This document shows, in pieces, positions 21,341 to 61,813 of a stretch of DNA of 64,000 nt. The notes under the pieces are model-generated. The model saw only the letters and a program-made list of their open reading frames with translations, was not told where the DNA came from and ran no database searches. The stretch lies in contig NW_027361717.1 of the NCBI RefSeq assembly GCF_039654945.1, forward strand, positions 28,458,001 through 28,522,000. Reading direction: 5' to 3'. Both the position numbers and the translations under genes were made by a program. This DNA comes from Dendrobates tinctorius (Eukaryota). The stretch's first letter is position 1, and each line of letters opens with the position of its first letter.

Positions 21341-21471
21341 CTATATCGCCAGTGGGCAGCTGTGACTGTGGACATGAGGGTGTTTATACTGGGCTGAGTC
21401 AAAGTCAATCGCTTTTCCTTGTAGAGTTATCTTCAGACAACCTGAGAAACGCGCCCCAGGCTCAGCTTGTT
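21341..21471 (-). CDS. SHBG-like gene exon 8 (last coding exon)
   Basis: tttgcag| (E)QAEPGARFSGCLKITLQGKAIDFDSAQYKHPHVHSHSCPLAI*, similar to the GAS6/PROS1/SHBG C-terminus. Confidence 0.92.
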
Positions 21472-24400
21472 CTGCAAACACAAGAGAATATGATAATTAG
21501 GATGAAAATTTTCATCAATCTGGGGGTCTGGATGACCAAAAAGGTTTTCACAGTAGGCCTATAGGGGTATGTGCACACGCTGAGTTTTTCAAGAGGAAGA
21601 CGCTTCACGAAACGGTGGTATTTTTTTTTTTCCTGAAGCAACTTTTTTTGTGTTTTTTTGACGTTTTCTGACGTATTAATTTTACAATAAAGATGTCGCT
21701 AGCAGTTTGAGGCAAAGACACTATTACAATTTTAAGCCTTCCCATTATCTTCTATTAGGGCTCGTGCAGATGACCGTATTATTGGTCTGAGTATGATCTG
21801 ACAAAATTTTGGATCGCACTTGGGCCACTGTCATTCTATGGGGCCGTGCACATGTTGATTTTTTCCTCGGACAGTACTGGTCCGAGGAAAAAAAAAAAAT
21901 CGCTGCATGCATTCAATAGTCAGATTGCAAATATACTATACTCGGATTGCCAACAATTCGAAAGTAATGCCACCACTTTATTAGATCAGCAACCTCTTTC
22001 TTCAAGATCCTTAGGACTAAAAAATAAAGTAAAAAATAATTTAAAAAGTATTTTACAAAGTTTAAAAATATAAAAAAAAGTTGGTTGAAATCAATGCCTT
22101 TTCCAAAAAATAAAAATATAAAAAAAGCAAACAAACAACATACAGTATTTGATGCCGCAACATGTGTAAAAGTCTGTATTACTAAAATATAAAAATTAAC
22201 CAAAACCGCAAACCACGTAAAGAAAAAAGAACTTAGAATACTTTCACACAGCTCTATCTACACAAAAGAAAAATTGCTATAAGTTTCTGAACTCGGCGAC
22301 ACAAACCAATTGTTTGTTACAGAGCCATGAGGGTTTTTTTTCCCTAAAATAACTAAATATGTGATACAATTTTTTGTACATTTTTTTTTCCTCTTAATTG
22401 CAAGCAGATGAGTGAGGGTCCAAATGCTAAGCCCAGTGGCGTATCGCCAATGGCAGCAGGCCATGTGGCTGCTATAGGGCACGTGAGTCGGGTAAGACCG
22501 GTATAGCGCCAGCCCCATCTGCCATAGCACGTTCCACTGTATCGGCATCCTGGATGCAAATACAGTTGATAGCAATGATGGAGGAGGAAGCATCAGCTGA
22601 CACTTCCTCCTCCGTCATTCTTCCTCAGCACCTGACGTCACTGCACAGTGCCCACTGCATTGAGATGTCCAGTGCTTCAGAATGCACATTCCCATGCAAG
22701 AACGAACGCACACAGGGGAAAGAGGAGGATAGGTAAGTATTTGTTTTCAATTATAATCAGTGAGTACATTGTGGTGGCCATAATACTGTATGGAGGACTA
22801 TCAGGAGTGCATTATACTATATGTAGAACTAGGAGGAGTGCATCATACTATATGAACTATGGGAAGTGCATTATATTATAGGGAGGACTATGGGGAGTGC
22901 ATTTTACTATATGGAGGACTATTGGGAGCGCATTATATTATATGGAGAACTATGGGGATTGCATTATACTATATAAAGTACTATGGGGAGTGCTTTATAT
23001 TATACAGTATGGAGGGCCATGGGGATTGCATTAAACTGCATGGAGGATTATGGGGAGTGTATTATAATGTATGGAGGACTATGGAGTGCACTATACTATA
23101 TGGAGGACTATGGGGGCGCATTATACTATATTGAAGACTATGGGAGTGCATTATACTATATAGAGGACTATGGGGAGTGCATTATACTATATGGAGGACT
23201 ATGGGGTGTAATATACTATATGGAGGATTATGGGGTGCAGTATACTATATAGAGGACTATGTGGAGGCCACTATAATATTTTAAGGGCTATGTGGGGGCC
23301 ATTATAATATTTGAAGCGCTATGTGGGAGCCTTTATACTTTATGCAGGGCTATGTGGGGGCAATTAAGCTATATGCAAGCAATTATACAGTTTGAAGGCT
23401 TGTGTGGGGTCCATCATACTGTGTGGAGGCTCTTCTACTGTTTGGAGGCTACTGGGGGCCGTTATAGAGTGTGGTATGTTGTGGAGTAATTATACTATTT
23501 GCAGGTCCATTACACTGCATGGAGTGCTTTGTGGGGGTCATAGTTGGGGATCATACTCTGTTGGGTCACCATACTTTGTCAGGGGAGTTGAAGAGGGGTA
23601 TAGTAGGTTTGTCACAGGGTACTGTGGAGGAATTCGCTGTGAGGTATCATACAGTTTTAGTGTGGCACCTTTGTTGACATCATATGTTATAGGTGCAAGG
23701 AAAGGGAAATCTAGGGCTTCAGTCGGAGGAAAATTACTTTGTAACGGCTGCAAAGTTGTGAGATATGCTTTTCTGTGACCCATATGAATATTTTTTTTTT
23801 TGTTGGAGGGGGGCCCAATGATTTCTTTGAAATGTCCATGGCTGAGCCCTTAGTGATAGCTCAAAAAAGGAGATTTTTGTGTACTCACCGTAAAATCTCT
23901 TTCTCTTAGCCTTTTAATTGGGGGACACAGAACCGTGGGTGTTATGCTGCTGTCCACTAGGAGGCGACACTATGCATAATCTGAAAAAGATTAACTTTGG
24001 CTCCTCCTCTGCAGTATACACCCCTGGACGGCATCAGCCTTCTCCAGTTTTGTGCAAAAGCATTAGGAGGAATATACCAAAAACATAACCATGCCTGTAA
24101 AAAAAGGCTACTATAAACAGGCTCAAACAACAATATGAGAACCCAACCGTAACAACGGCCCGCAAGGGCAACAGGGTGGGAGCTGTGTCCCCCAATTAAA
24201 AGGCTAAGAGAAAGAGATTTTACGGTGAGTACACAAAAATCTCCTTTACTCTGTCGCCTTATTGGGGGACACAGAACCGTGGGACGTCCCAAAGCAGTCC
24301 CTGGGTGGGAAGCAGTGGACGAATATTGTGCTGACAGTCCCCTAGACTTGGGGTACTGCCGCCTGCAGGACCCGTCTACCCAGGCTCGCATCCGCTGAGG

Positions 24401-27400
24401 ACTGGGTATGTGTTTTGTAAATGTGTGCAGGCTAGTCCAAGTGGCTGCCTTACACACTTGATGTGCCGAGGCTTGATGCCGAATGGCCCAAGAGGCCCCT
24501 ACCGCCCGCGTAGAGTGTGCCGTGATACCGGCCTGAAGGGGAGAACTGTTGAGGCGGTAAGCCTCTTGAATGGTGGACTTGATCCACCTAGCAAGGGTGG
24601 TTTTGGAAGCCGGTAGGCCCTTGCGAACGCCTTCTGGAAGAAGGAAAAGTGAATCAGACTTCCGGAAGGGAGCAGTCCTAGACACGTAAATACGCAATGC
24701 CCTGACAAGGTCAAGCGTATGCAGAGCCTTCTCTACCCTATGAACGGGAGCCGGGCAAAGAGACGGTAGTGATATTTCCTCATTGAGGTGGAAGCTAGAC
24801 ACGACCTTCGGAAGGAAGGATGGTACTGTACGGAAAACCACCTTGTCCTGATGAAAAACCAGGAAGGGTTGTCTGCAGGACAGAGCTGAAAGTTCAGACA
24901 CCCTGCGTAGCGAGGTGATTGCCACCAGGAAAACCACTTTCTGTGATAGAAAGCGGCGTGAGACCTCCTTAAGGGGTTCAAAAGGAGGTGACTGTAGTGC
25001 TGTCAAGACCAGGTTGAGGTCCCACGTCTCCAACGGACGTTTGTAGGGGGGAACCAATCGGGAAACCCCTTGGAGAAAAGTCTTCACTTGCGGCTTGTTA
25101 GCAATACGCCTCTGAAAGAGCACTGAAAGCGCTGACACCTGGCTCTTCAGCGAGCCCAGGGATAGCCTGGCGTCCAGGCCTGACTGAAGGAAACCGAGGA
25201 CCTTTGGATGAGAATAGGGAAGTGGAATCTGCCCACGAGAGTCGCACCATGTGAAGAAAACCTTCCAGGTACGATAGTAAATCCTGGCTGAAGTTGGCTT
25301 TCGAGCCCTGATCATGGTTTTAACAACGTCTGGTGAAAAACCTGCTTGGGTCAAAACCCAGGTCTCAATTGCCACGCCGTCAAATTGAGAGCCCCTGAGT
25401 TCTAGTGGAAGAATGGGCCTTGTGACAGGAGGTCGGGACGTGTGGGGAGACGCCAGGGAGCGTCTGCTGTGAGTTGCACGACGTCGGCGTACCATGTACG
25501 CCTGGGCCAGTCTGGAGCGATCAGAATGGTGGGAACACCCTCTTGTTTGATCTTCCTCAGGACTCTGGAGATCAGGGGGAGGGGTGGAAAAATGTACAGA
25601 AGCTGGAACTGGGTCCAGTCCTGAACCAGGGCATCTGCTCCGAGCGACCGCGGATCGCGCGGCCTGGCCATGAAATTGGGAACCTTGGCATGGAGATGGG
25701 ATGCCATCAGATCCACGTCCGGGGTCCCCCAACGATGACAGATCTGACAGAAGACTTCGGGATGGAGAGACCATTCCCCTGAGTCCATTCCTTGTCGGCT
25801 GAGATAGTCAGCTTCCCAGTTGTCCACACCCGGAATGTGGACAGCGGAGAGTACCGACCTTGCAGCCTCCGCCCATTGTAGGATACGCGTTACTTCGGTC
25901 ATCGCCTGGATGCTGCGGGTGCCGCCTTGATGGTTCACGTATGCCACTGCCGTGGCATTGTCAGACTGTACTCTGATATGAGAGTCTGCCAGCAAGTGAT
26001 GGAAGGCTTTCAACGCCAGGAAGATGGCCCGAATTTCCAGGATGTTGATGGGCATGGTCGATTCCCTTGGTGACCACCTGCCTTGCGCTCTGTGATGTAG
26101 GTGCACCGCGCCCCAACCCATAAGGCTTGCGTCGGTGGTCAACACCTTCCATTGACCGGAGAGAAAGGATTTTCCCCTTGCAAGCGAGGTTGGCTTGAGC
26201 CACCAGTGCAGGGACCTCCTGGTGTTTGCTGATAACCGGAACTCCCTGTCGAGGGAGAACGGATTCCTGTCCCAGGACTTGAGGATGGCCAGTTGAAGGG
26301 GTCTGAGGTGAAGCTGGGCAAATGGTACCGCCTACATTGCTGCTGCCATCCTGCCAAGTACTCTCATGGCATACCGGAGAGATCTGGGGGGACTTGCGGA
26401 GGAGTGTGTGAACTCCCAGACGGAGAGCCAGTGCCTTGTCCCTGGGGAGGATCACCAGACCCTTGGAGGTGTCGAATAGCATCCCCAGGAAGGTCAGAGA
26501 CTGACTCGGGGTAGTCGAGGACTTCTGTGAATTGACTAACCATCCCAGGCGCGTCAGTGTCGATCGTGATCGAGACGTTGACCTCGCAGTCCTTGAGGGT
26601 GGGGCCCTTGATGAGAAGGTCGTCCAGGTATGGAACGACTACTATGCCTCTGGAGTGCAGAACGTCCATGGTAGCCGCCATGACCTTTGTAAATGTTCTG
26701 GGAGCCGTGGCGAGACCGAACGGGAGGGCCACAAACTGGTAATGGTCTTGGTTGATTGCGAATCTGAGAAACCTCTGATGGGCGGGAGCAATCGGTATAT
26801 GCAGGTATGCGTCCTGTATGTCTATGGAGGCAAGATATTCTCCTTTTTCCATAGACGCAACGATTGACCGGAGGGATTCCATGCGGAAGTGACGAACTCG
26901 AACGTACTTGTTGAGTTGCTTGAGGTCTAGTATGGGTCGGACGCTGCCTCCCTTCTTGGGCACCACAAAGAGGTTGGAATAGAACCCTCGGAAGCGCTCT
27001 TCTGCTGGGACTGGCACTATGACTCCTGCTCGCAGGAGGGAAGAAACCGCTTGACGGAAGGCCTGAGCTTTGAGCGGGGATTTTGGAGGGACAGAGGGAA
27101 AAAACCTGTGCGGTGGGCTGGTAGTAAACTCGATTTTGTATCCTGAAGACACTATTTCCTTGACCCACTTGTCTTCTGTAATAGGCAGCCAGACCTGCTG
27201 AAAGAGTAGCAGTCGTCCGCCTACAAGTGGGGTGTCTTCCAGAGGGGCATGAGTCAGGATGAGGGAAAAGTCTGAGGTTTTCCTCCTTTAGGTTTTGCCT
27301 GGCTTGCCTTTGATTGCCAGTCCTGTCCGGCCTCTGTGCCGCACGTGTGTTGTCCCTGCGGGGGGAACGATTACAGTTTTGTGCTGGGCGTGAGACGGAC

Positions 27401-30400
27401 CAGCCTGAAGATTTCCGAAAGGATCGGAAACGAGATTGATTACGCCTTTTAAACGTGCATTTTGGTCTTAGTTGAGGGAGGGAAGTACTTTTGCCCCCGG
27501 TAGCATTGGATATCATTGTATCCAGCTTTTCACCGAAAAGACGGCCACTGAAGTACGGGAGATTTGTTAGGGACTTTGAGGCCGCATCCGCTTTCCATTC
27601 TCTTATCCAGAGAATACGCCGGATTGTGATGGCGTTTGATGCTATTCCCGCTATTCCTCTTGCAGAGTCCAACGCTGCATGGACCATGTAATCTGCCACC
27701 ACTGCAATTTGCACCGCCTGGTCCGCCAGCTGAGGATTTGAAGCTTGAAGGCCCTTTTGCAATAGATCAGCCCAAGCCATGATGGCCTTGGATGCCCAAA
27801 CTGAAGCAAATGCGGGAGCCAAAGAGGCACCTGCCGCTTCAAAGATTGAACGAGCCATGCGTTCGACTTGTCTGTCTGCTGTGTCCTTGAGGGTTGAACT
27901 GTCCGGCAGCGAGAGGAGCGTTTGTGCCGCCAGCCTAGAGACTGGATGGTCCACTTCAGGCGGATCTGTCCAATCCTTGGTGTCTTTCTGTGGAAAGGGG
28001 TATTTTGCTTCCAAATACTTGCGATTCGCGAATTTTTTCTCAGGCTGCGAAAAATGCTTAGAAAGGATTTTTTGAAATTCCGGGTGATTAGGGAAGACCT
28101 TCAATGGTTTCTGAACACTTTCAAAGGAAATCTTGTGTTCTGGTGCTTCCGGGGTTGGATCTGAAATGTCCAGCACCCGAAGGATGGAAGAGACGATATC
28201 CTCAACTATCGCAGTATTGCTAGGGGGACAAGGGAGCAAAGCGTTCTCTGTTTCGTTATCTGAATTGGAGTCACATATGCCCTCTGAGTCCTGCGCATCG
28301 CTAAGGAGCTCCCTAGCGGGCGAACTAGAGCGGAGGTTTCCCGTGGTCTGGGATCGTTGTGGAGATCCGCATTGTCCTTCTCTATCAGGGGACGGCCTCG
28401 GTGACCTGAGGCCTATTGCTATGTGAGGACGCAGATGAACGCGACCTGTGGGTTCGCTTACGCCTTGAACTGTCGGAAGCGCCCTGATCATGAGACCGGA
28501 CGTCCCTTTGCTGGGTAACGTTCATAGCCGAGACATGACCCTGCAGAGCCTGCAGTAATGTGGAGGTCAGGTTATCTATAGACTGTGTCATAGACTGCGA
28601 CATCTGAGTCGCCCATTGGGGTTCTGATCCTGTTTTTTGGGTACAATCCCGGCAGTGCGGGTACGTGCTGCCGCTGGGGAGAGTGGCCTTGCAGGCTGTG
28701 CAGACTGCATAAAAGCAGTCTTGCCTGGTTCTTTTCCTTGAGCCCGACATAGTACCTAGGCTGATTAGTGGAGGCCCTACAGGAGTATCTACGCAGAGGA
28801 AAGGAGTAGGAGAGCGCTATAGGGTATAGGAATTCACAGCTGAGTACCAAGGACCCAGCTGTGATCTTACCCCACCGGTGCTCCCCCTTAGGTCCAGCGC
28901 TGATAAGTCCCACGTCCTGTGCCCCCCGGAGACTCTGTGCTGCCTTCCTCCAGGTGCAGCAAGATGGCCACCGGATTCTGAGGTGGAGAGGGAAGGGGGC
29001 GGAGAGCTGGAAAAGGGCGCGCTTTTACATGTAAAAGCGCGCCCCTCCTGCCTCGATCCGCCCCTTCTATGACACTGCAGTGTCATTTTAGTCATCCGGG
29101 GGGGCGGGCCGGGGGGTTGGCGGCGACTTTGGCTAGGCCGAAGCCGCGGCCTAAATTTGAGGTCTCCTGCCCAGCAGGGCTCCAGGACGGCGCGGTCGTC
29201 CGCGGGGGGGGGGCGGATTTAAACCAGACCCCCCCAGAATGAAAGGAGGGCTGGCGGTGGGGCCATATATGCGCCATTGCTGCAGAGACCGGGGCGCAGG
29301 GAGCCCAGTCTCTGATAAGTGTTGTGCCTCGCTGCACCTCCCCCGGTCCCAAAAGGAGCCCACAGGTGGACTGGGGTCCCTGGTGCCTGGTACAGGCCCT
29401 ACCTGCGGTGTCTCAACCTAATACCCCCAGAGGGGGATTAGGGAGGGTGCTGCTATCACCGTCAGGGGCTTCATCGTCGCCTCAACCTCGACCCAGAGCC
29501 GGACGGAACTGAGGAAGGAGGGGGGTCTCGACCTCGAACCAGTACCCGAGGGACTGGTGAGGGAGCGACATGGGGAATAGCCACCTTGACCTCAACCGGG
29601 TACCCCTAGTAGGGGACCGAGGAGGGAGCCATGCCGGGAGTCTCGCTGGAGACCCTCTTTTCTTCATCTGTAGTCCTTTGGAAAAAAATCCAGGAAAAAA
29701 GACGGAGTAAAAAAAAAAATCTTAGGTGTGCCTCCTGCGACACTAAGCAAAAACTGGAGAAGGCTGACGCCGTCCAGGGGTGTATACTGCAGAGGAGGAG
29801 CCAAAGTTAATCTTTTTCAGATTATGCATAGTGTCGCCTCCTAGTGGACAGCAGCATAACACCCACGGTTCTGTGTCCCCCAATAAGGCGACAGAGTAAA
29901 CCCAGTGAACTGCACAGCTCAGGATACAGCAGTGCACAGCTCCTGCCTGAGCGAGTGCACAGGGCGGACTACTGATTCAATAGTAATCATAAGCTTTTAC
30001 AGGGTATTTTTGAGCAATCATGGCAGCTAAGGACCTGGATTCCCACCAATTTTCTTGCAATAGGACAATATGAAAAAATTAAATCAAAGGTTTGGTTACT
30101 CCTTATTCACGAACATAGTTTAAAAAGAAAGGATTTAGAAATTTAGTATTGCTGGAATCATGCGAACCTGAAGAATCATGTTGCCAGATCAATTTTATTG
30201 CACAATTAACCACGTAAAAATGAACCCCCCCCCAAAAAAAAAAAAATAGCAGAAATGCTAGAGATTTTTTGCTTTTTTTTTTTTTCGCAATTAATAAATG
30301 GCTGGTCCTGGAGGGGCTAAAATGGTTATCCAGTTCTTAAATGTTGGTGGCATAGTCTTAGAGAGGCCAATTGTGAGGGTCCTCCAGGATGTTTGAAGGT

Positions 30401-33400
30401 GCCATATCACTTCAGACCTAGACTACGAACCCCATTCCAACATTGTCTAGTGTACAAAGAACATATTGTACTGAGCCCTAGATGTGGACAGTTACCTGAA
30501 ATACCTCCAATAGAGAGTTGAGAATCATGATCAAGCCATATGATTTCCAAAGCCTTGAAGTCTGCTGGCAAAATATCCATAGACGATGAGACCTCACTGG
30601 TACTCAGGATAACTTGATTGGACAGGATAACAACAGTCACGGTATGCCAAGCTTTAAGACATACACCAGGGGGGAACTTCAATGAATGTGCCAATTTTCC
30701 CAGTAAAGAAACTTCCAGAACCTGAACACAATTAAATAATATAATATATAGATAACATACAGGCTCTAGAATAAATACTATTATAACATTAATGATTGTT
30801 ACCCGCTTTTCCAGATCCAAAGTTATTGTCAGTGCAGAAACATTGCCTGCTCCGGACAGTCCGAGAAGGACCCCGCCATCTTCTAGTACCCGGAAGGAGA
30901 TCTGGAGGGTCAGTTTCCAGGAGTCTTTGTGCTTTGTTGGAAAAACTAAAATCAATAAAGATATTAAAGGGGTATTCCAACAATAGATATTCATTGCAAG
31001 GCCGGGGTCACACTTGCAAGAAACTCGCACGAGTTTCGAGTCTCAATACCCGACATTCCGCCGGCACTCGGACCGGATCGCTCAGCTGCATAGAAAAACA
31101 TACAGCCGCACATTCCGGTCCTGAGTACCGGCGGCAGTGCCGGGTATTGAGACGTGAGACTCGTGCGAGTTTCTCGCAAGTGTGACACCGGCCTAAAGGA
31201 GAGGAGATAAGTAGGATGGACCTAGTATGGCACTTGTTACTATACTAGCCTCCATAGTTGCAGCTGTGAAAGAGCTCTTTTGGAACCATGTTCTAAAGAG
31301 CAATCTAGCCAAATAGACTTTTATGATATAACCAATGGATACTTAAAAATGTTTGACTTAATATGAAATAAAAATCTCTGCCTGCTAATAATGGTTAAAG
31401 AGATTATCTCATGTAAGCACCCCCTGTCTGTAGGCCCTTATAGGGCAAATGGATGTCAGGGAGATGATCTCTTTCTCAGGATCAGCAACCTGGCTGAACA
31501 AGACTTTCATTGGTAAATAAGCTTTAGGGTAGATGCACATGACCGCTTTCTCTCCATCCATGAAAAACAATGATTGTGCTGGTCAGACTCTAATCAGAGT
31601 TTGATTAGTGGGATCAGTTTTTTCTCAGAGGTGAAGAGAAAAAAAAAACATCTCCAACTTCTCCATTATGTCATCAGAGTGAGGTCCAATGTTTTCCAAG
31701 GACCCACCCATGTTTTGATTTGCAGGATCAAATCAAAATCAGACCTGGCACCGACTGATCCCAGGAAAAAAACTGGACTTGTGCACAGCCCCATATAATA
31801 ACATGGGTACGAGCACTATCTGTGAAAGCCATAGATAGCACTCGTCCAATATAATCGGTCATGTGAACGAGGATAATGGGGAAACTCCAAATGTAAATTC
31901 TTTAAAGGAGTTGTTCACCTTTGGAGACTTTTTTTTTTTTTTTTACTAACTAGTATATTTAGGACTTAATTATTGTTTTTGCAATTGGGTTTAATTACAA
32001 ATTTTGCACTATTTGCTTTTTATACCCTTTGTGTTGCAATGGCTATTACTGCGTGCAGAAAGAGTTAGCCTAAAATTGGGTAGAGAGCTGATTCTGACAC
32101 GAGAGTTAGTAACTCTGTTATTAGTCTTTTTCTGAGCTCCTTTCAGCTGAGTTATGACCACAGAAAACATGAAGGTAGAACGTGCAGGGAAACAAAGCCT
32201 GTAAAAACCGAACAACGTGAAATGACATTTTTAGTGAAATCCAATTACAAAAATTATTTTTATGATCACATAGATGCAAATATGAAAAATGTCCCCAAAA
32301 GGTAGACCACCCCTTTAAATATGTGTATAAGAGGACAACTCACGAGCAGGTTTGAAGGTAACATAGCCATGAGCAGGAAAGAAAGCTCCAGGTTCCTCAT
32401 TTTGAAAGCAGCGCCGGTTCTCGTCCGTCTCCATTGCATTGTCCAGGCTTTCTGTATTTTTTTTCACCCAGGCCCAGTTACGTAAACACCCGTCCAAAGC
32501 AGGAACCAGCTAGATAGAGGGAGCACATGGTGCCTTCAGCAAGGCCACATTCACACATTCAGTATTTTATGTCAGTATTTGTAAGCCAAAACCAGGAGTG
32601 GTGATAAATACTATGTTCATTCTTTTTCTTTATTCCTTTTCTTCATTCTTTTTAGTACATCCCCTCTTGTAAAGCAATATATTAATATATGTCCACACTG
32701 TGACATCCGCCGGCAATACAATTTCATCTCAATATCAAATATTCGTCACTTTTTATGTGCGTTGCATTATTGGGACTGTGCGGCCATTTTCTGGCTTCAG
32801 GGTTTGGTCACATGATTAGCACACACTATATAACTTATCTGGGGGGAACGGTTTTCTCACTAGCATTAGACCACATTCACACATTCAGAATTTTACCTCA
32901 GTATTGGGTCTGTATTTTACCTCAGTATTTGATGAGTTTTTTACCTCAGTATGTGTAAGCCAAAACCAGGAGTGGGTGATAAATACAGAAGTGGTGACGT
33001 GTCTCTATTATACTTTTCCTCTGATTGTACCTCTGATTGGCTTACAAATACTGGTGGAAAGTACTGATTACATACTGAACGTGTGAACGTGGCCTTATAC
33101 CCCTCTAGAGTAATGTATTATTACCAATAAGTAGGTTGTACGTCATTGGTTAATATGGATTTCTGTACATTTTATAGCTTAATCTGTTAGTTATGGAACG
33201 TCATTCTCTGTGCCACATAATGACATAGTACCGGCCTGAGAAGCTGCACATCACTGTTTGCAGGAAGGTCACCCAAGATGATGATAAGTGAGGAGGAGAC
33301 CCGAGGCATCAGCTCATTGTTCACCTGGAACGTCAACATCACCACAACCTCTCCATTCACTTTCACATCAATAGTGTCAATGGTACTGTCCACCGTCACC

Positions 33401-36400
33401 TGCAAGACAACACAAAAAGCAATGGAGGCATTCCTGACAAGCACCCTAACAGGTCCGCTGCTATAGTGTGATATATTATTTTAACACTTAGAGAGGCATT
33501 CTCAAGTTTGGAAGTTATCTCCTATCCAGCAGATAGGGGAAAACTTTCTGATGGTGGGGGTCTGACCGCTGATCCTGAGAACCAGACAGTCATTTGCAAT
33601 TCATACTTATGGAAGCGCCAGAAACCGACCGAGCACAACAATCGTCAATCTCTGGCAGTCCTAATGAATGAGTATGAATGGAGTGGCAGTGCCCATGATC
33701 AAGTTCAGCCCCACTCACGTTGGTCTCTTCAAAACTCTGGTTTTTGCGATGGATGGGTGTCCAGAAGTCATCCCCTACCCAATAGATAGGGGATAACTTC
33801 CAAACTTGAGAATACCTCTTTGAGATCTCAACAATATGGTTCACTTGTTACATACTATTATAACCATATGCTTTATAATACATTATATACACAGGGTCAA
33901 CATAGACACTTATGAGTGCCATCGCAGATCCTAAGCTGCACTTCATCTTACCTTCCTCCATTGTCCATCGCTCATATCTGGCCCCCACTTGGAGAGAACC
34001 ATTTGTCCATTTCCATTACTCATCTGTACTTCCAGACGACGATCTCGGACTCCAAGTACAAACCAATTATCTTGTCCAACATCTCCATAAAAGATGATGC
34101 CTTCTGGATCAAAGGTCCGGAAATCAAAGGAGGAGAGGTTACTGTGGAGGATAGGACAGGTGAGACATTATGGGGACCAGAATTGCATTAACATCTATAT
34201 ACAAAAATACAGCTACCTGTCTATTACCTCATAGTCACGAGTCAAGAAAATTGGAAGGAATACTGCCGAGGTAAGGAAGGCTGAAATCCAACCACCACTG
34301 AACAAAACATAGTTTAACATTTTTGGGTTGAAGAGGGACTCAAAATCAACTCCCAAACGTACTGCCAGTTTTTAGAAGACACTTTCTCCAATCAGTGGTA
34401 CAGGAAATAGTCTGCGTCTTTCAAGAAAACCATGATTATATGCAGAACAATCCTCCATCGCAGCATTGAAGTATCCACTGCTTGGCTGCAAGTAAAGGCC
34501 CTAAAGTGGATTTCCAGGACTTAAAAAAAAAAAAAAAAAAGGCATGTAGTTGCTAACAGAGGCAACTGCCTGTCATTGACCACTCTTGCCAGAGATTCAG
34601 CTACTCCCTGTCAACAGAGCAGCGGTTGCTCTTCATGTTGACAGACCAGCACTACTCGTGTCATGCTGATTGACAGCCGGCTTCCTCCAATTAGGCAGCA
34701 GAGAGATGACTGTCAATCAGCATGACACCAATAGTCCAGGCTTGTCAACAGAAAAAGAAACTGCTGCTCTGTTGACAGGGAGTAGCTGAATATCTTGCAG
34801 GAGCGGTCAATGACCCGTGCTGGGTACAACAGACAGGTAAGTTGCCTTTGTTAGTACCTAAAGGCTTCTTTTTTTTAAGTGCCAGATATCCCCTTTAAAG
34901 ATGACAGACTATTGACATGGCCCCTTCCTCACCAGTCCTAAGCCCTATTAAGAACTTGTAGGAGATTTACACTGGGAGATTTACGGTGAAGAAGAACAGT
35001 CACCTCTCTGATCGGTGTCTGGGAGGCTGTGGTTGGTGCTGCCCAAAGTTGATAGTCAACAGATAAAAAAAAAACAGACTACATGGATGGAGTTTATGAC
35101 TGTTATAGAAAAGAAGGGTGGCTATATTGGCTATTGATATATATATATATTTTTTAAATCTCAGTATTTTTGTACATTTTGAGTTGTTTGCTGATTATTC
35201 TCACTTTGATGAAATTTGAATGAAGATGGAAACATTTACTATTTTCATTTAGCTGCATAAAAATTCTGCAGAGATATTCTCCTAAGATAGACAAATCCTC
35301 ACTTTTACTTTCTTAAAAATTCAGGTTTATTAACTTTTTGGATTGGACAACAGCTTTGTAGTTGCTCAATAATAACATGATTCATAAAAAATACAAATTG
35401 CCTAATAATTCTGCACACAGTGGACATTATAATGCTCTTGGATTAGGTGGCAAAAACCTGGTTACAGATTCCCTTTAATTCATAGAAATCCTCATATGGC
35501 CAGTTCTTATAAGCAATATTCCTGATGGAAGTCTATCTACATAGCAGCCATTGGATCGCAAAAATACATGAGATGGGTAATACCTTGTCAAATCGGAAAG
35601 TTGGAATTCCAGGTGCAGAACACTCTGCGGATTCCCATTACCTATGTACAGACTCTCTGAGGATCTCACCGGCTTCTCAACAGAACAAGACACCTGGAAA
35701 AATACTCAAATATAACTTCAAAACTTTAATCGGTATGTCTCAGTCCAATGGCAACCCCCAGAAAATCAGGTGGGAAAAATATCCTTACAAATGAAGCAGA
35801 ACTGAGAGCATTACAACATTCCCTAAAATGTTACAACATGAAGTCTGATAGATGTGTGTCCCATATCTGGAACATGCACCAATGGTCGAGAACAGGAAAA
35901 ACCTGCAGGAAAAAACCCACATACGTTTGTTGCGGAAACACACTATAAACATACGTAATCTGCACCAGACTGTATCAATAAAGTTTTGTAAAAGCAAGAT
36001 ACCAAAAAGTATCAAAATCAAAGCAACTTTATTTAAAGTAGCGCTCCCGCTAACTTTTTTTTATTCATTAAATGTGAGTGTACAGGTATGCTATGCAGTG
36101 TGAGTGTATTAGTATAGTTACCGCCAAATTCTCCGGTGTCCAGCGACGTTCTCAGAGGTTACTGCAATTCTGACTAGCTGCCTCATTCTATACACTATAC
36201 AGGAGCCAGAAGTCGCTGTAAGGCCGGGGTCATGATAACACAGGCCCCACTCTCATACATAAGAAAAAAGGACACCGAGTTCTAAGTTTGGCATAAAATG
36301 GCTGTGGCGTTTATTTTGAGTTACTCAACAACCAATTTTATTTAATCATAACCCTTAAAAACCATTAAATATCTCCATCACTGAATAAAATTATTACTCT

Positions 36401-38622
36401 CATGACCCAATCCTCCCTAAAACAGGGAGATTATCTCACAAATAAATGACAACAATACAATGAAATACTTTTAACAGGGCGGAAAGGATCTTGAAATCTT
36501 CTTGAGGTAAACTGAGGTAACGGTCTCACACAGCTGATTATATAACAAGTTCTTCCTGCTCATACTCTGTCAGCCAATCAAAACAGGTTCAAAAAAAGAG
36601 CGGGAAGCCAAATCTGCCTGACAACAGGGAACCTGCTCATGAAATATCACAGCTTACTGATACATTAACTCTTTGTAAACCAGAGCTTAACAAACCAACT
36701 GAACACCATCAAATTAATAGGTATGGGAGCTGCGTTATCATGCGACCCCCCCTTGTATTCAATAAGGGGAGGGCGTTCATTCTTGCGAGTGCAATGCGGG
36801 AAACTTGAGCAAATCTCTCACCTCAATACCCAGCACTGCTGCCAGCGTTTTGGACTGGAGCGTTCAGCTGCATAGAAAGACATGCAGCTGCACATTCCGG
36901 TCTCGACGGCAGTGCCAGGTATTGAGGCGCGTGTTTCTCGCATTGCACTCGCAAGTGTGACCCCCGGCCTTACAATGAAAAGCCTACAGGACATTGTTCT
37001 GAAGCTCAATAGGATTTCATTGTAAAAGAGACTTCTGGGTCACGCAGCGTGACACAGCCAGCTGCGGAGCGATGATGTCTCAGAGAAGCTGAGAAGAACG
37101 ATGCTGGGCATCGGAGAGAGCAATGATAGGCGAGTATATTAATACACTCCCACTACATTACATGCACATATACACACATGTAATGAATAAAAAAAAAATT
37201 ACTGGGAGTGCTTCTTTAAGACAAAACATGTCAAAAAGACAAAAAATGCAGCATCAAAAACACAATAAAAACACATGTAAAAAAAAAAAAAATGCAAGTA
37301 ACCTAAGTCCACATACACACGTTGAATATTTAGTGAGTTTTTTTTACCTCAGTATTTGTATGCCAAAACCAGGAGTGGGTGAAAAGTGCAGAAGTGGTGA
37401 CATTTTTCTATTACATTTTTCCCCTGATTCCACTCCTGGTATTGGTTTACACATACTGATGCAAAATACTGAACGTGTGCACATGGCCTTAACTAGCTAA
37501 TATTTGCAGACATGCTGAAGAAAATCTGTAACATTAAAAATGCACCAAATACTCATTGTGGGAACTTAGCTTAAGTATTTGGTGAGTTTTTTACCTCAGT
37601 ATGTGTAAGCCAAAACCAGGAGTGGAACAATTAGAGGAAAAGTAGAATAGAAACACGTCACCACTTCTGTATTTATCACCCACTCCTGGTTTTGGCTTAC
37701 AAATACTGAGGTAAAAAACTCACCAAATACTGAATGTGTGCACGTGTGACCATAGCCTAAGGCTACAAACCAGGAGTGGGTGATAAATACAGAAGTGGTG
37801 ACGTGTTTCTATTCTACTTTTCCTCTAATTGCTCCACTCCTGGTTTTCAAGTTTTGGCTTAAAAATACTGAGGTTAAATACTGACCAAATACTGATAGTG
37901 TGAACATGGCCTAAGGCTAAAGATCAGGAGAGGGTGAATAATGCAAAAGTGGTGACGGGTTTCTATTCTAGTTTTCCTCTATCTTTCCCACTCCTGGTTG
38001 TGGCTTACAAATGCTGAGATAAGACACCAAATACTCAACATGTGCACGTGGCCGTAGGCTGGAAACACACGTGTAGTTTCAGATTCAGTTTTTTTGAGCC
38101 AAAGCTAATAATGGATGCAGCAGGAAGAATTAGAAATCTGTCTTTTTCATTCCCTCTGCATCCTACATTGGCTTTGGCATAAAAAGACTGCACTAAATAT
38201 TGCTTAAAAGAACCTCCATGTGTGATTCCAGCCTCACAATGTATAAATTTTCATTTTCATACTGCACAAACTGAGTGAAGCGCAATAAAGCCCTAAATGT
38301 ATAAATCTAGAAGATCTAAATTAATTCTGTTTATTAAATTTTCTGCCTCCTTATTCGGAGTTACAATAGTGCAGTGAGTATACTGCGTAGCGCTGTATAA
38401 AACCACAGCTATGGCAAACCCAGCTCTGCTACATCTTCTGATTACTAAATGAAGACTGTGCCACTGTTTTTGTTTTTTAGAAATATAACTGATAATTATT
38501 ATTTGTGTTACCTTTGCCGGGTGATCATGGTAAGGCTTTGGTAATATAGTTTCCAAAGTAAGACCTCCATAGGAAAGCAGGACTACATTGACCAGCATGG
38601 ACACGCTGATGAGAAGCTTCAT
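21341..38622 (-). CDS. shbgb: Sex hormone-binding globulin-like protein (probable Shbgb; SHBG/GAS6/PROS1 family, signal peptide + 2 laminin-G domains), 8 exons, 414 aa
   Basis: Exons 38622-38512, 35693-35584, 34141-33952, 33399-33232, 32509-32344, 30945-30803, 30721-30496 and 21471-21341 are all GT-AG with compatible phases and total 1245 nt. Motifs SSFDFRTFDPEGIIFYGD, NWFVLGVRD, SDGQWRKV, LVPALDGC and FSGCL..IDFDSAQYKH..SHSCP. The family is secure; the paralog name is inferred from synteny. Confidence 0.85.
22790..23300 (+). repeat. ~30-bp minisatellite (TATGGAGGACTATGGGGAGTGCATTATACTA)n
   Basis: About 16 degenerate tandem units. The overlapping ORFs are repeat artefacts. Confidence 0.85.
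24185..24283. repeat. DIRS internal complementary region (ICR)
   Basis: TGTGTCCCCCAATTAAAAGG...AAAAATCTCC|TTT|ACTCTGTCGCCTTATTGGGGGACACAGAACCGTGGG is the reverse complement of 23866-23929 joined to the reverse complement of 29862-29900. Confidence 0.9.
24400..25400 (-). pseudogene. DIRS tyrosine recombinase (C-terminal frameshift removes the catalytic Tyr)
   Basis: AITSLRRVSEL, HSTRAVGAS and AATWTSLHTFTKH, then the frame diverges where HY is expected. Confidence 0.85.
25402..27250 (-). pseudogene. DIRS pol: RT + RNase H + N6-adenine methyltransferase-like domain, frameshifted
   Basis: RPILDLK, LPFGLATAP, VPYLDDLLI; TTDASLMGWG, INILEIRA, VQSDNATAV, NWEADYLSR; DVDLMAS, LYIFPP. Confidence 0.9.
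27250..28750 (-). pseudogene. DIRS ORF1 (gag-like, Cys-rich N-terminus, LAP2alpha-like region), frameshifted
   Basis: CTAC..HCRDC N-terminus; WTDPPEVDHPVSRL, IRRILWIREWKAD and LPYFSGRLFGEKLD. Confidence 0.8.
30496..30721 (-). CDS. SHBG-like gene exon 7
   Basis: gttcag|VLEVSLLGKL..CLKAWHTV..SQLSIGGIS|gtaact. Confidence 0.88.
30803..30945 (-). CDS. SHBG-like gene exon 6
   Basis: ttttag|(L)FPTKHKDSWKLTLQISFRVLEDGGVLLGL..DLEKR|gtaaca. Confidence 0.88.
31000..31193. mobile_element. Harbinger-type MITE (GGCCGGGGTCACACTTGC family), complete
   Basis: TIRs GGCCGGGGTCACACTTGC / GCAAGTGTGACACCGGCC followed by TAA. Relatives at 1257, 36221-36969 and 63057-63354. Confidence 0.85.
31903..32318. mobile_element. 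TTAA-site (T2/Kolobok-type) MITE
   Basis: TTAAAGGAGTTGTTCACC ... GGTAGACCACCCCTTTAA. Similar elements at ~33488-33821, 34500-34897, 39936-40224 and 59302-59645. Confidence 0.6.
32344..32509 (-). CDS. SHBG-like gene exon 5
   Basis: atctag|LVPALDGCLRNWAWV..RRCFQNEEPGAFFPAHGYVTF|gtgagt. Confidence 0.93.
33232..33399 (-). CDS. SHBG-like gene exon 4
   Basis: ttgcag|VTVDSTIDTIDVKVNGEVVV..IILGDLP..LLRP|gtacta. Confidence 0.9.
33952..34141 (-). CDS. SHBG-like gene exon 3 (core of LG1)
   Basis: ccacag|(S)NLSSFDFRTFDPEGIIFYGDVGQDNWFVLGVRDRRLEVQMSNGNGQMVLSKWGPDMSDGQWRK|gtaaga. Confidence 0.95.
34230..35420 (+). mobile_element. Decayed Tc1-like element interrupted by a palindromic MITE (~34500-34897)
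   Basis: INSQTYCQFLED and WPPSSPVLSPIKNL-like remnants; ends AATAATTCTGCACACAGTG. Confidence 0.55.
35584..35693 (-). CDS. SHBG-like gene exon 2
   Basis: ttccag|VSCSVEKPVRSSESLYIGNGNPQSVLHLEFQLSDLT|gtatta; its phase links exon 1 to exon 3. Confidence 0.82.
37305..38060. mobile_element. Cluster of short MITE copies (GCCAAAACCAGGAGTGG family) in both orientations
   Basis: Repeated AAGCCAAAACCAGGAGTGG / CCACTCCTGGTTTTGGCTT with GCC-TAA-GGC junctions. The same family occurs at 32543-32610 and 32870-33095. Confidence 0.65.
38512..38622 (-). CDS. SHBG-like gene exon 1 (signal peptide)
   Basis: AAAATG MKLLISVSMLVNVVLLSYGGLTLETILPKPYHDHPAK|gtaaca; hydrophobic leader. Confidence 0.82.
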
Positions 38623-38663: not shown

Positions 38664-38675
38664 CCTTTATATATC
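38664..38675 (-). promoter_or_regulatory. Probable TATA box of the SHBG-like gene
   Basis: GATATATAAAGG on the minus strand, ~45-50 bp upstream of the ATG. Confidence 0.55.
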
Positions 38676-55777: not shown

Positions 55778-56702
55778 TAAGCACCACTAAAAAACCTGGA
55801 CAATCTGGAGCCACAAACACCAGAAACTGAAAGAACTTGAGAATTCAACAATGCTTTCAGGTATGTCCACAGGGTAAGAAAATTTAACAGAATTTACATT
55901 TTCTGAAAACTACAGATTTGCCATGAAATTTGCTAAAAATCCAAGTTACAAATAGATTTGTAGCAGATTTCACCTCCCTGGCAAAGCGTTAAACATAAAT
56001 TGACATTCCATAGCTTTAACAGCTTCCACAAGTCAACTTCCATGGAGATTATTTTACAATTTTGCAGAGATTTGGTCAAAAATATCAGTCACTTTGCAGT
56101 AATCAGCACTTCGAAAATCTAGATGAAGAATCTTCAGCGCATCCACCCCTGTGAACATATCCTTTAGTAATGGTAATCATTCTAAAATTGCATAAAGAGA
56201 TGATAAAAAGCGCCCGGACAGGACCATAAACATCTAAACAAAAGAGGAACCGAACAGAAAGCGCATGAAGGTGCAATAAACAAGACGGGCGCAGAGTCAG
56301 ACACAGGATAGGATCAGTGGACATGACCGTGTACATAGTACTAACTCAACAATCAAGTGTAGCCCTGGGGTGAACGGACCGGTCAGCAATCTGGCGAAGT
56401 AATGAGAGCGTTGTTCGTTACAGTCCTTCATATCCCTGTTCTTTTACCCACATCAAGTGCTCTTACTACTTACAGACCGCTAACATGCCCGTTCACCACA
56501 GCCAAGCTAAGTTCAGACAATANNNNNNNNNNNNNNNNNNNNNNNNNNNNNNNNNNNNNNNNNNNNNNNNNNNNNNNNNNNNNNNNNNNNNNNNNNNNNN
56601 NNNNNNNNNNNNNNNNNNNNNNNNNNNNNNNNNNNNNNNNNNNNNNNNNNNNNNNNNNNNNNNNNNNNNNNNNNNNNNNNNNNNNNNNNNNNNNNNNNNN
56701 NN

Positions 56703-58234
<1,532 letters not shown>

Positions 58235-61059: not shown

Positions 61060-61090
61060 CTATGAACCTTTTCCCACAATTGGATTCTCT
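61060..61090 (-). CDS. RASA2: RASA2 last coding exon
   Basis: tttcag|(Q)ENPIVGKGS*; phase matches the preceding exon. Human RASA2 ends ..KYGSKENPIVGKAS (from memory). Confidence 0.88.
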
Positions 61091-61632: not shown

Positions 61633-61813
61633 TGGCTGCCATATTTTGCACTGGTGGAACCTTTCTTGTGTTTCTCGTGGGGTTCATTCAATTTCTCGAC
61701 AATGGCTTTAATTTGCTGGAGAGTCTTAAAGGTTTCCACAGAATCATCTATAGTGAAGTGGTAATCGCTGTGTTCCTGTGGGCCCTGATACACCGCCATG
61801 CTCGCACAAGCCT
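61633..61813 (-). CDS. RASA2: RASA2 (GAP1m, Ras GTPase-activating protein 2) penultimate coding exon
   Basis: tttcag|(E)ACASMAVYQGPQEHSDYHFTIDDSVETFKTLQQIKAIVEKLNEPHEKHKKGSTSAKYGS|gtgagt. Matches the RASA2 C-terminus better than RASA3. Confidence 0.9.

What the first reader, a model, noticed from the sequence alone, without database searches (positions are those of the whole stretch)
21341..38622. Intact SHBG-like gene directly downstream of RASA2: the missing ohnolog slot of the GAS6-RASA3 pair
Seen: a complete, stop-free 414-aa secreted protein with two LG domains, in 8 exons with SHBG-like organisation and no Gla or EGF exons, tandem with RASA2. The six-frame track shows it only as fragments and misses exons 3 and 8. 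Known: in human, GAS6 lies downstream of RASA3 (13q34, with GRK1, ATP4B, TFDP1). RASA2 (3q23, with RNF7, GRK7, ATP1B3, TFDP2) has no such neighbour, and canonical SHBG is beside ATP1B2. A second paralog, shbgb, has been described in salmonids and some other non-mammalian vertebrates. Inference: this is that whole-genome-duplication paralog, retained in amphibians and lost in mammals. Its C-terminus (IDFDSAQYKH..HSCP) looks more like GAS6/PROS1 than SHBG, so it could be a Gla-less TAM-receptor ligand or decoy as well as, or instead of, a steroid carrier.
Basis: partly seen in the sequence, partly recalled or inferred. Interest (0 to 1): 0.75.

Follow-up and report, generated by a model that had tools for sequence, protein, structure and literature searches.

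The report
Poison-frog shbgb gene beside RASA2
This is an intact, transcribed copy of shbgb, the second sex-hormone-binding-globulin gene that amphibians and some fishes kept and mammals lost; the gene is real and correctly read, but it was already described in 2020 and is annotated in related frogs.

Summary
On the minus strand, 38622..21341, eight GT-AG exons encode a 414-aa protein with a signal peptide and two laminin-G domains, and no Gla or EGF exons. A spliced transcript contig from a public run matches exons 2-7 base for base, and a second run gives the exon 7-8 junction.

The protein is 93.7% identical, without gaps, to the 414-aa RefSeq "sex hormone-binding globulin" of Ranitomeya variabilis. 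dN/dS between the two is 0.28.

In a maximum-likelihood tree it sits inside an amphibian clade (100/99). That clade includes the Xenopus tropicalis protein that Guiguen et al. 2020 used as their Shbgb bait. It is sister to fish Shbgb, including the characterised rainbow-trout Shbgb (100/98). Canonical SHBG and GAS6/PROS1 fall outside.

The last two coding exons of RASA2 lie 22.4 kb upstream on the same strand, so the RASA2 tandem is real. It recurs in Ascaphus and Polypterus.

The main inference, a genome-duplication paralog kept in amphibians, is therefore right but already published. The suggestion of a TAM-receptor ligand is not supported. The C-terminal motif is ancestral to the whole family, and the basic Axl-binding strand of GAS6 is acidic here. 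The most likely function is steroid binding. Tissue of expression could not be determined.

The parts
38665..38673 (-). TATA-like box (TATATAAAG) about 50 nt upstream of the ATG; putative core promoter
   Evidence: Read directly from the sequence. The X2 transcript contig has 112 nt upstream of exon 2, which fits a start about 1 nt before the ATG and so a short 5' UTR. Inferred, not tested.
38512..38622 (-). shbgb exon 1: ATG, signal peptide (hydrophobic core, residues 3-17) and the start of the mature chain; 111 nt, phase 0 donor AAG|GTAACA
   Evidence: mean Kyte-Doolittle 2.42 over residues 3-17. The orthologous R. variabilis exon has the same length and a GT donor.
35584..35693 (-). shbgb exon 2 (110 nt): Cys40 and the first strand of LG1
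   Evidence: X2 contig piece 35584-35695 and the joint 34141/35584.
33952..34141 (-). shbgb exon 3 (190 nt): core of LG1, with the equivalents of human SHBG Ser42, Asp65 (Asn here), Phe67 and Asn82
   Evidence: Pfam Laminin_G_1 42.5 bits. Human SHBG 60.5 bits against GAS6 43 bits. X2 contig piece 33950-34141.
33232..33399 (-). shbgb exon 4 (168 nt): second half of LG1
   Evidence: X2 contig piece 33232-33397 and its joints.
32344..32509 (-). shbgb exon 5 (166 nt): LG1-LG2 linker with Cys201 and Cys227
   Evidence: Contig pieces 32344-32509 in X1, X2 and X7.
30803..30945 (-). shbgb exon 6 (143 nt): start of LG2, with N-glycosylation motif NVS
   Evidence: Contig pieces 30801-30945 in X2 and X7.
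30496..30721 (-). shbgb exon 7 (226 nt): LG2 core with Cys317
   Evidence: X2 contig piece 30496-30719. The X1 loose end at 30496 equals the start of exon 8.
21341..21471 (-). shbgb exon 8 (131 nt including the stop TAG): end of LG2 with Cys383, Cys410 and the family-wide HSCP motif
   Evidence: The junction is supported by the X1 loose end. The orthologous exon in R. variabilis has the same length.
61633..61813 (-). RASA2 penultimate coding exon
   Evidence: tblastn with Bufo (75% identity over an 81-residue alignment that extends 20 residues upstream of the exon; about 90% over the exon's own residues by my count), Xenopus and gibbon RASA2, E 3e-30 to 1e-19, and with the Polypterus fused model. 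AG acceptor and GTGAGT donor.
61060..61090 (-). RASA2 last coding exon (ends ENPIVGKGS, stop at 61062-61060), 22.4 kb upstream of the shbgb ATG on the same strand
   Evidence: The C-terminus is identical to those of Bufo and Xenopus RASA2.

Best explanation
The locus is the poison-frog ortholog of shbgb, the second sex-hormone-binding-globulin paralog. Shbgb arose with canonical shbg (shbga) in the early vertebrate genome duplications. It survives in amphibians, non-teleost ray-finned fishes, a few teleosts and reportedly lamprey, and was lost in amniotes.

Shown here: the gene is intact, spliced as predicted, transcribed in at least two related species and under purifying selection. It lies 22.4 kb downstream of RASA2 on the same strand.

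Inferred: the product is a secreted glycoprotein made of a signal peptide and two laminin-G domains held by three disulfides. It binds sex steroids in a pocket of the first LG domain, as trout Shbgb is reported to do and as human SHBG does. The Ser42 and Asn82 equivalents are kept. Asp65 is Asn, which is the state typical of the Shbgb clade and is shared with trout Shbgb.

By analogy with fish it would buffer steroids locally, for example in the gonad, rather than act as the hepatic plasma carrier. Its tissue of expression in frogs could not be tested here.
For: - Gene model: 8 GT-AG exons, 414 aa.
- Transcripts: the contig and joints fall exactly at the exon 2-7 boundaries, and the exon 7-8 junction is seen as a loose end.
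- Orthologs: 93.7% gapless identity to the 414-aa R. variabilis protein and 54% to X. tropicalis KAE8604776 (P0028), the Shbgb bait of Guiguen et al..
- Careful ML tree: Shbgb clade 100/98 and amphibian subclade 100/99, including trout Shbgb NP_001118145. Shbga clade 100/99. GAS6/PROS1 outside.
- Two paralogs in one species: Mixophyes P0012 and P0052 lie on contigs of different length; Rhinophrynus P0020 and P0098; Lissotriton P0401 and P0391.
- RASA2 linkage: the exons in the window; consecutive locus tags FKM82_003918 and FKM82_003919 in Ascaphus; the fused RASA2+Shbgb model KAG2462269.1 in Polypterus.
- Constraint: dN/dS 0.28, with exon lengths identical to R. variabilis.
- Pocket: the Ser42 equivalent is invariant in 30 Shbga and Shbgb sequences, and GAS6/PROS1 have Ala there.
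- Fold: LG1 superposes on human SHBG LG1 with 38-40% identity and TMt 0.78-0.79.
Against: - Steroid binding was not measured, and several hydrophobic pocket residues differ from human SHBG: Met107 is Ser and Met139 is Leu.
- Tissue is unknown because run metadata are coded. Exon depth near 1e5 in run X19 hints at very high expression in some tissue, which is not obviously the low, gonad-local pattern reported for fish. Contig depth is a poor measure of expression.
- The deeper node (Shbgb sister to Shbga) is favoured at 98/89, but the alternative (Shbgb with GAS6/PROS1) is not rejected (AU p = 0.074).
- A canonical shbga in this same genome could not be looked for.
Confidence: 0.88

Rival explanations
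1. It is the canonical SHBG (shbga) of this frog, as NCBI names the orthologs in Ranitomeya, Bufo, Rana, Hyla and others.
For: Source names. Exon 3 scores higher against human SHBG than against GAS6.
Against: In the tree it lies in the clade with trout Shbgb and the Xenopus Shbgb bait. It is separated, with 100/99 support, from the clade that holds mammalian, squamate, turtle, lungfish, salamander and the second frog SHBG. Identity to Mixophyes canonical SHBG is only about 29%. It lies beside RASA2. By my recollection of the human map, which was not tested here, canonical SHBG lies beside ATP1B2.
Confidence: 0.02
2. It is a Gla-less ligand or decoy for the TAM receptors (Axl, Tyro3, Mer), working like the LG pair of GAS6 or PROS1.
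For: The overall two-LG fold is closest to GAS6 LG1-LG2 (TM 0.78/0.84). However, that is the only solved LG pair of this family. The C-terminal motif resembles GAS6. The grouping (Shbgb with GAS6/PROS1) is not rejected (p = 0.074).
Against: The strand that forms the electropositive major Axl contact in GAS6 (PMC9065593) has net charge +6/+7 in primate and frog GAS6 and -2 here, with Arg positions replaced by His, Glu and Gln. The specific residue numbers R308, R310 and K312 are from my memory of Sasaki et al. 2006. The C-terminal motif is also present in fish canonical Shbg. The Ser42 equivalent typical of SHBG is kept, whereas GAS6/PROS1 have Ala.
Confidence: 0.04
3. In neobatrachian frogs Shbgb has become the main, perhaps the only, SHBG. 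It would be made in large amounts and act as the circulating carrier, possibly with a widened ligand range.
For: NCBI names only this gene SHBG in more than a dozen hyloid and ranoid frogs. Canonical frog Shbga turned up only for Mixophyes and Rhinophrynus in my searches. Exon depth in X19 is 1e4-1e5 against 1e1-1e2 in introns.
Against: My searches were not designed to show absence: clusters are at 50% identity, word sharing limits sensitivity, and no genome search was possible. Guiguen et al. report both genes in Xenopus. Contig depth does not measure expression.
Confidence: 0.1
4. It is a chance open reading frame or a decaying pseudogene.
For: None found.
Against: Spliced transcripts, dN/dS 0.28 and conserved exon structure, and orthologs across all three amphibian orders.
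Confidence: 0.01

Closest known systems
Shbgb (sex hormone-binding globulin beta), first described in rainbow trout (NP_001118145; Bobe et al. 2008) and extended to amphibians, holosteans, bichirs, eel, arowana and lamprey by Guiguen et al. 2020 (bioRxiv 10.1101/2020.07.02.184432)
   Same: Same clade in the ML tree (100/98). Same architecture: signal peptide plus two LG domains, about 412-414 aa. Same clade-typical Asn at the human Asp65 position. Same paralogon.
   Different: About 33% identical to trout Shbgb. This is a frog ortholog whose ligand and tissue are untested. The immediate RASA2 tandem is not mentioned in the text of that preprint (its figures are not held).
Canonical SHBG / Shbga (human SHBG, PDB 1D2S, 1LHU and others)
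   Same: LG1 has 38-40% identity and TMt 0.78-0.79 to the human steroid-binding domain. The Ser42, Phe67 and Asn82 equivalents are kept.
   Different: Separate clade (100/99). Asp65 is Asn and Met107 is Ser. It keeps the third, interdomain cysteine pair (Cys40 and Cys317) that mammalian SHBG lacks. Its genomic neighbourhood differs: RASA2 rather than ATP1B2.
GAS6 / PROS1 C-terminal LG pair (PDB 1H30, 2C5D)
   Same: Best whole-chain structural match (TM 0.78/0.84). Six cysteines aligned with the three GAS6 LG disulfides. A GAP1-family gene lies directly upstream, RASA3 for GAS6 and RASA2 here. The RASA3-GAS6 arrangement is from my knowledge of human 13q34 and was not tested here.
   Different: No Gla or EGF modules. 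About 25% identity. The basic receptor-binding strand is not conserved. It lies outside the GAS6/PROS1 clade.

Membership tests
Shbgb | Groups with characterised Shbgb (trout NP_001118145, X. tropicalis KAE8604776) to the exclusion of Shbga and GAS6/PROS1 | tested here: met
   Careful IQ-TREE run, 65 rows: Shbgb clade 100/98, amphibian subclade 100/99.
Shbgb | Signal peptide followed by two laminin-G domains, with no Gla or EGF modules | tested here: met
Shbgb | Lies in the Shbgb paralogon (Atp1b3 / Zbtb38 / Lamp3 region of Guiguen et al.; human 3q23 equivalent) | tested here: inconclusive
   RASA2, a 3q23 gene in human by my knowledge, is the upstream neighbour. ATP1B3, RNF7 and GRK7 lie outside the 64-kb window and could not be checked.
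Shbgb | A separate shbga gene coexists in the lineage | tested here: inconclusive
   Both paralogs were found in Mixophyes, Rhinophrynus and Lissotriton and are reported for Xenopus. This species' own genome could not be searched.
Shbgb | Binds sex steroids | not testable with these tools
   Indirect only: the Ser42 equivalent is invariant, Asn82 is kept, and Asp65 is Asn as in trout Shbgb.
Shbgb | Gonad-predominant, non-hepatic expression | not testable with these tools
   Transcripts exist, but run tissues are coded.
Canonical SHBG (Shbga) | Falls in the Shbga clade with mammalian, sauropsid and teleost SHBG | tested here: not met
   The Shbga clade (100/99) excludes it.
GAS6/PROS1 TAM ligands | N-terminal Gla domain and four EGF repeats | tested here: not met
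   No tblastn hit to residues 1-300 of frog GAS6 or rodent PROS1. The X2 contig has only 112 nt upstream of exon 2, which fits exon 1 (111 nt of CDS) and leaves no room for further coding exons.
GAS6/PROS1 TAM ligands | Electropositive LG1 face and strand that contacts Axl Ig1 | tested here: not met
   Net charge is -2 here against +6/+7 in GAS6 over the aligned strand. The role of that face is taken from PMC9065593.

The most novel reading that the evidence does not exclude
In hyloid frogs such as poison frogs, Shbgb rather than Shbga may be the dominant or sole SHBG. It would be produced at very high levels and act as the circulating carrier, possibly with a ligand range that goes beyond sex steroids. 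This would reverse the division of labour described in fish.
Probability: 0.1. Interest if true: 0.6.

Novelty: already known. Interest (0 to 1): 0.25.

Why it matters
The result corrects a naming problem more than it reveals a new gene. In many frog genomes this gene is labelled simply "sex hormone-binding globulin", "GAS6-like" or "protein S-like", although it is the beta paralog. Anyone studying steroid transport in amphibians should know which of the two genes they are looking at.

The small addition here is the tight RASA2-shbgb tandem. It is seen in this window, as consecutive genes in Ascaphus, and as a fused gene model in Polypterus. It mirrors RASA3-GAS6 and supports the idea that a GAP1-type gene and an LG-pair gene were already neighbours before the vertebrate genome duplications. 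No function of amphibian Shbgb has been tested, so ligand and tissue remain open and are easy to test.

Tried and rejected
- Canonical SHBG: rejected by the tree.
- TAM ligand or decoy: no positive evidence.
- The whole spliced protein could not be handed to the search and folding tools without typing it. I therefore used exon references and the 93.7%-identical ortholog P0008 as a proxy for the Pfam scan, the representative search and the fold.
- The look-up of encoding contigs found no record for X. tropicalis P0028. In X. laevis no gene is called within 10 kb upstream of shbgb, so RASA2 ends further away there. tblastx of the X. laevis flanks against the window found nothing conserved.
- Earlier notes of this scan hold nothing on RASA2 or SHBG.
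- Paper searches for RASA2/RASA3/GAS6/SHBG synteny and for SHBG in poison frogs found nothing relevant.
- The AU test could not reject Shbgb grouping with GAS6/PROS1 (p = 0.074), so the deep branching order stays open.
- No canonical AATAAA was seen in the 190 nt after the stop, so the 3' end is not defined.
- N runs in the window were left untouched.
Full report
**Gene model.** I translated the minus strand between 21 and 39 kb and found eight stop-free pieces that resemble SHBG. Joining them at canonical sites gives these exons: 38622-38512, 35693-35584, 34141-33952, 33399-33232, 32509-32344, 30945-30803, 30721-30496 and 21471-21341. Every intron is GT..AG and the phases agree.

The N-terminus is a typical signal peptide, with a mean Kyte-Doolittle value of 2.42 over residues 3-17. 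There are two N-x-S/T motifs and six cysteines, at positions 40, 201, 227, 317, 383 and 410. A TATA-like box lies about 50 nt upstream of the ATG.

**Transcript evidence.** Runs that held about 0.15-0.18 of the sampled words of window:30300-35900 were found. That share equals the exon fraction of the stretch, 1003 of 5601 nt.

I laid four runs on the stretch. A single 1294-nt contig of run X2 lies on 35584-35695, 33950-34141, 33232-33397, 32344-32509, 30801-30945 and 30496-30719, with 0-1 mismatches. Allowing for the stated 2-nt ambiguity, these are my exons 2-7. All five joints skip stretches that read CT..AC on the plus strand, which is GT..AG on the minus strand.

In X2 the non-repeat intron bins have zero depth, so the run behaves like RNA. 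A 15-nt loose end at 30496 in X1 is the reverse complement of the first 15 nt of exon 8. Runs of a second, slightly diverged organism (X1, X7) show the same joints. Tissue is unknown because the metadata are coded. In X19, exon bins reach 1e4-1e5 while introns reach 1e1-1e2, but contig depth is not a measure of expression.

**Family and fold.** The exon 3 piece hits Pfam Laminin_G_1 at 42.5 bits. It matches human SHBG better than GAS6, 60.5 against 43 bits.

A word search with the stop-free stretch that spans exons 6-7, and then with a hit from that search, returned a series of amphibian proteins of 411-415 aa. They are variously named SHBG, SHBG-like, GAS6-like or protein S-like. My model is 93.7% identical, 1-414 to 1-414 without gaps, to the Ranitomeya variabilis protein P0008, and 86.7% identical to Anomaloglossus. 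The window therefore comes from a dendrobatid-group frog.

P0008 carries Laminin_G_1 at residues 81-211 (81.8 bits) and two Laminin_G_2 stretches. Its AlphaFold model (pLDDT 82.8, pTM 0.79) matches GAS6 LG1-LG2 best, with TM 0.78/0.84 at 25% identity. Its first domain matches the human SHBG steroid-binding domain with TMt 0.78-0.79 at 38-40% identity.

Residues 1-300 of frog GAS6 and rodent PROS1, which hold the Gla and EGF modules, find nothing significant in the window.

**Which paralog.** Guiguen et al. 2020 (bioRxiv 10.1101/2020.07.02.184432) showed that vertebrates have two SHBG genes. Shbga is the canonical, liver-expressed gene. Shbgb is expressed mainly in the gonad. Among tetrapods they found Shbgb only in amphibians, and they attributed the pair to an early vertebrate genome duplication, with Atp1b2, Atp1b3 and Atp4b marking the paralogous regions.

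Their Xenopus Shbgb bait, KAE8604776, is P0028 in my hit list and is 54% identical to the model. An exhaustive HMMER search of cluster representatives and cluster look-ups supplied the comparison set:
- trout Shbgb (NP_001118145);
- Shbgb-type proteins of gar, bowfin, sturgeon, bichir and arowana;
- canonical SHBG of mammal, squamates, turtle, lungfish, coelacanth, salamanders, two frogs and teleosts;
- GAS6 and PROS1, including lamprey forms;
- distant LG-pair proteins as outgroup.

The careful ML tree has 65 rows and uses LG+C20+F+G4. Its support values (ultrafast bootstrap / SH-aLRT) are:

| Clade | Support |
|---|---|
| Shbgb | 100/98 |
| Amphibian Shbgb subclade (holds the window protein next to Ranitomeya) | 100/99 |
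| Shbga | 100/99 |
| Shbga + Shbgb | 98/89 |

GAS6/PROS1 falls outside these clades. Forcing Shbgb together with GAS6/PROS1 costs 4.4 log-likelihood units, with AU p = 0.074. The deep order is therefore favoured but not settled. Membership in Shbgb is firm.

Mixophyes, Rhinophrynus and Lissotriton each have one gene in each SHBG clade.

**RASA2.** A cluster look-up showed that the Polypterus record KAG2462269.1, named "RASA2 protein, partial", is a fused gene model of RASA2 and the bichir Shbgb. Its RASA2 part, and then the RASA2 proteins of Bufo, Xenopus and gibbon, match window 61813-61633 on the minus strand with E values from 3e-30 to 1e-19. The Bufo alignment is 75% identical over 81 residues, 20 of which lie upstream of the exon; over the exon's own residues I count about 90%. 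All 120 best relatives of the Polypterus RASA part are named RASA2.

The final short exon, which ends ENPIVGKGS and then the stop, lies at 61090-61060. The RASA2 stop is thus 22.4 kb upstream of the shbgb ATG, on the same strand.

The linkage recurs elsewhere. Ascaphus has consecutive locus tags for RASA2 and Shbgb (FKM82_003918 and FKM82_003919). The two genes share a chromosome-sized contig in Polypterus, Amia, Rhinatrema, Lissotriton, Bombina, Discoglossus, Xenopus laevis and Bufo. That GAS6 lies directly downstream of RASA3 in human is from my own knowledge and was not tested here. The text of the 2020 preprint does not mention RASA genes, and its figures are not held.

**Constraint.** The R. 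variabilis locus is colinear with the window. All eight exons there have identical lengths and AG/GT flanks, and their joined CDS translates exactly to P0008. Nucleotide identity is 95.4%, dN is 0.030, dS is 0.107 and dN/dS is 0.28.

**Likely function.** In the alignment, the equivalent of human SHBG Ser42 is invariant in 30 Shbga and Shbgb sequences, while GAS6/PROS1 have Ala there. Phe67 and Asn82 are kept. Asp65 is Asn in the window protein and in nearly all Shbgb, including trout Shbgb. Met107 is Ser and Met139 is Leu. The human residue numbering and the roles of these residues are from my knowledge of the 1D2S literature.

I infer a secreted steroid-binding globulin. This is an inference only.

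The first LG1 strand in GAS6 forms the electropositive face that meets Axl Ig1 (PMC9065593). Over the aligned strand the net charge is +6/+7 in primate and frog GAS6, 0 in PROS1, and -2 in the window protein. I found nothing that speaks for TAM binding. It was not tested by modelling.

**Verdict.** The main interpretation is right but already published, and the orthologs are already annotated, often under misleading names. The modest additions are the tight RASA2 tandem and the transcript-verified model in a poison frog.

Noticed in passing
window 23868-29898 (intron 7 of shbgb, same orientation as the gene): A roughly 6-kb GC-rich (54-56%) DIRS-like retroelement. It has 135-nt inverted terminal repeats that are 99% complementary (23917-24051 and 29750-29884). 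It carries open frames for RT (RVT_1, 62.8 bits), RNase H, a LAP2alpha-like gag and a 616-aa ORF with no Pfam hit, which may be the tyrosine recombinase. It is absent from the orthologous site in Ranitomeya variabilis (L002 joins 29898 to 23868), so it is a young and possibly still active insertion.
   Followed up: partly
window 56946-57961 (minus strand, between RASA2 and shbgb): A Tc1/mariner-type transposase remnant: DDE_3 at 50 bits in a 184-aa open stretch, with further open pieces upstream. It lies next to the assembly gap at 56523-56702.
   Followed up: partly
window about 22860-23500 (intron 7): A tandemly repeated stretch that reads as many overlapping ORFs with a recurring YGGLWG-like motif on the plus strand. 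It looks like a satellite or minisatellite.
   Followed up: no
P0205 (Polypterus senegalus KAG2462269.1) and names: Public annotation of this gene family is inconsistent. Shbgb orthologs are named SHBG, SHBG-like, GAS6-like, protein S-like or hypothetical. One bichir record fuses RASA2 with Shbgb. Lamprey clusters mix GAS6-like with TMEM255B-like models.
   Followed up: partly
P0076 (Umbra pygmaea, 423 aa, hypothetical) in the tree: This short protein groups with rodent PROS1 (99/97) rather than with any SHBG. It is probably a truncated PROS1 gene model.
   Followed up: no
run X19 on window:30300-35900: Summed contig depth is 1e4-1e5 over shbgb exons and 1e1-1e2 over introns, in a run of unknown kind that also holds the introns. 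This suggests an RNA library from a tissue where the gene is very abundant. The tissue is not known.
   Followed up: no
window 32900-33100, 37350-37500, 37600-37800 (introns 1 and 4): Several copies of a short interspersed repeat that all translate to the same PGVGDKYRSGDV-like peptide. The same places attract many unrelated contigs and 'opposite strands' joints in the read lay-out.
   Followed up: no
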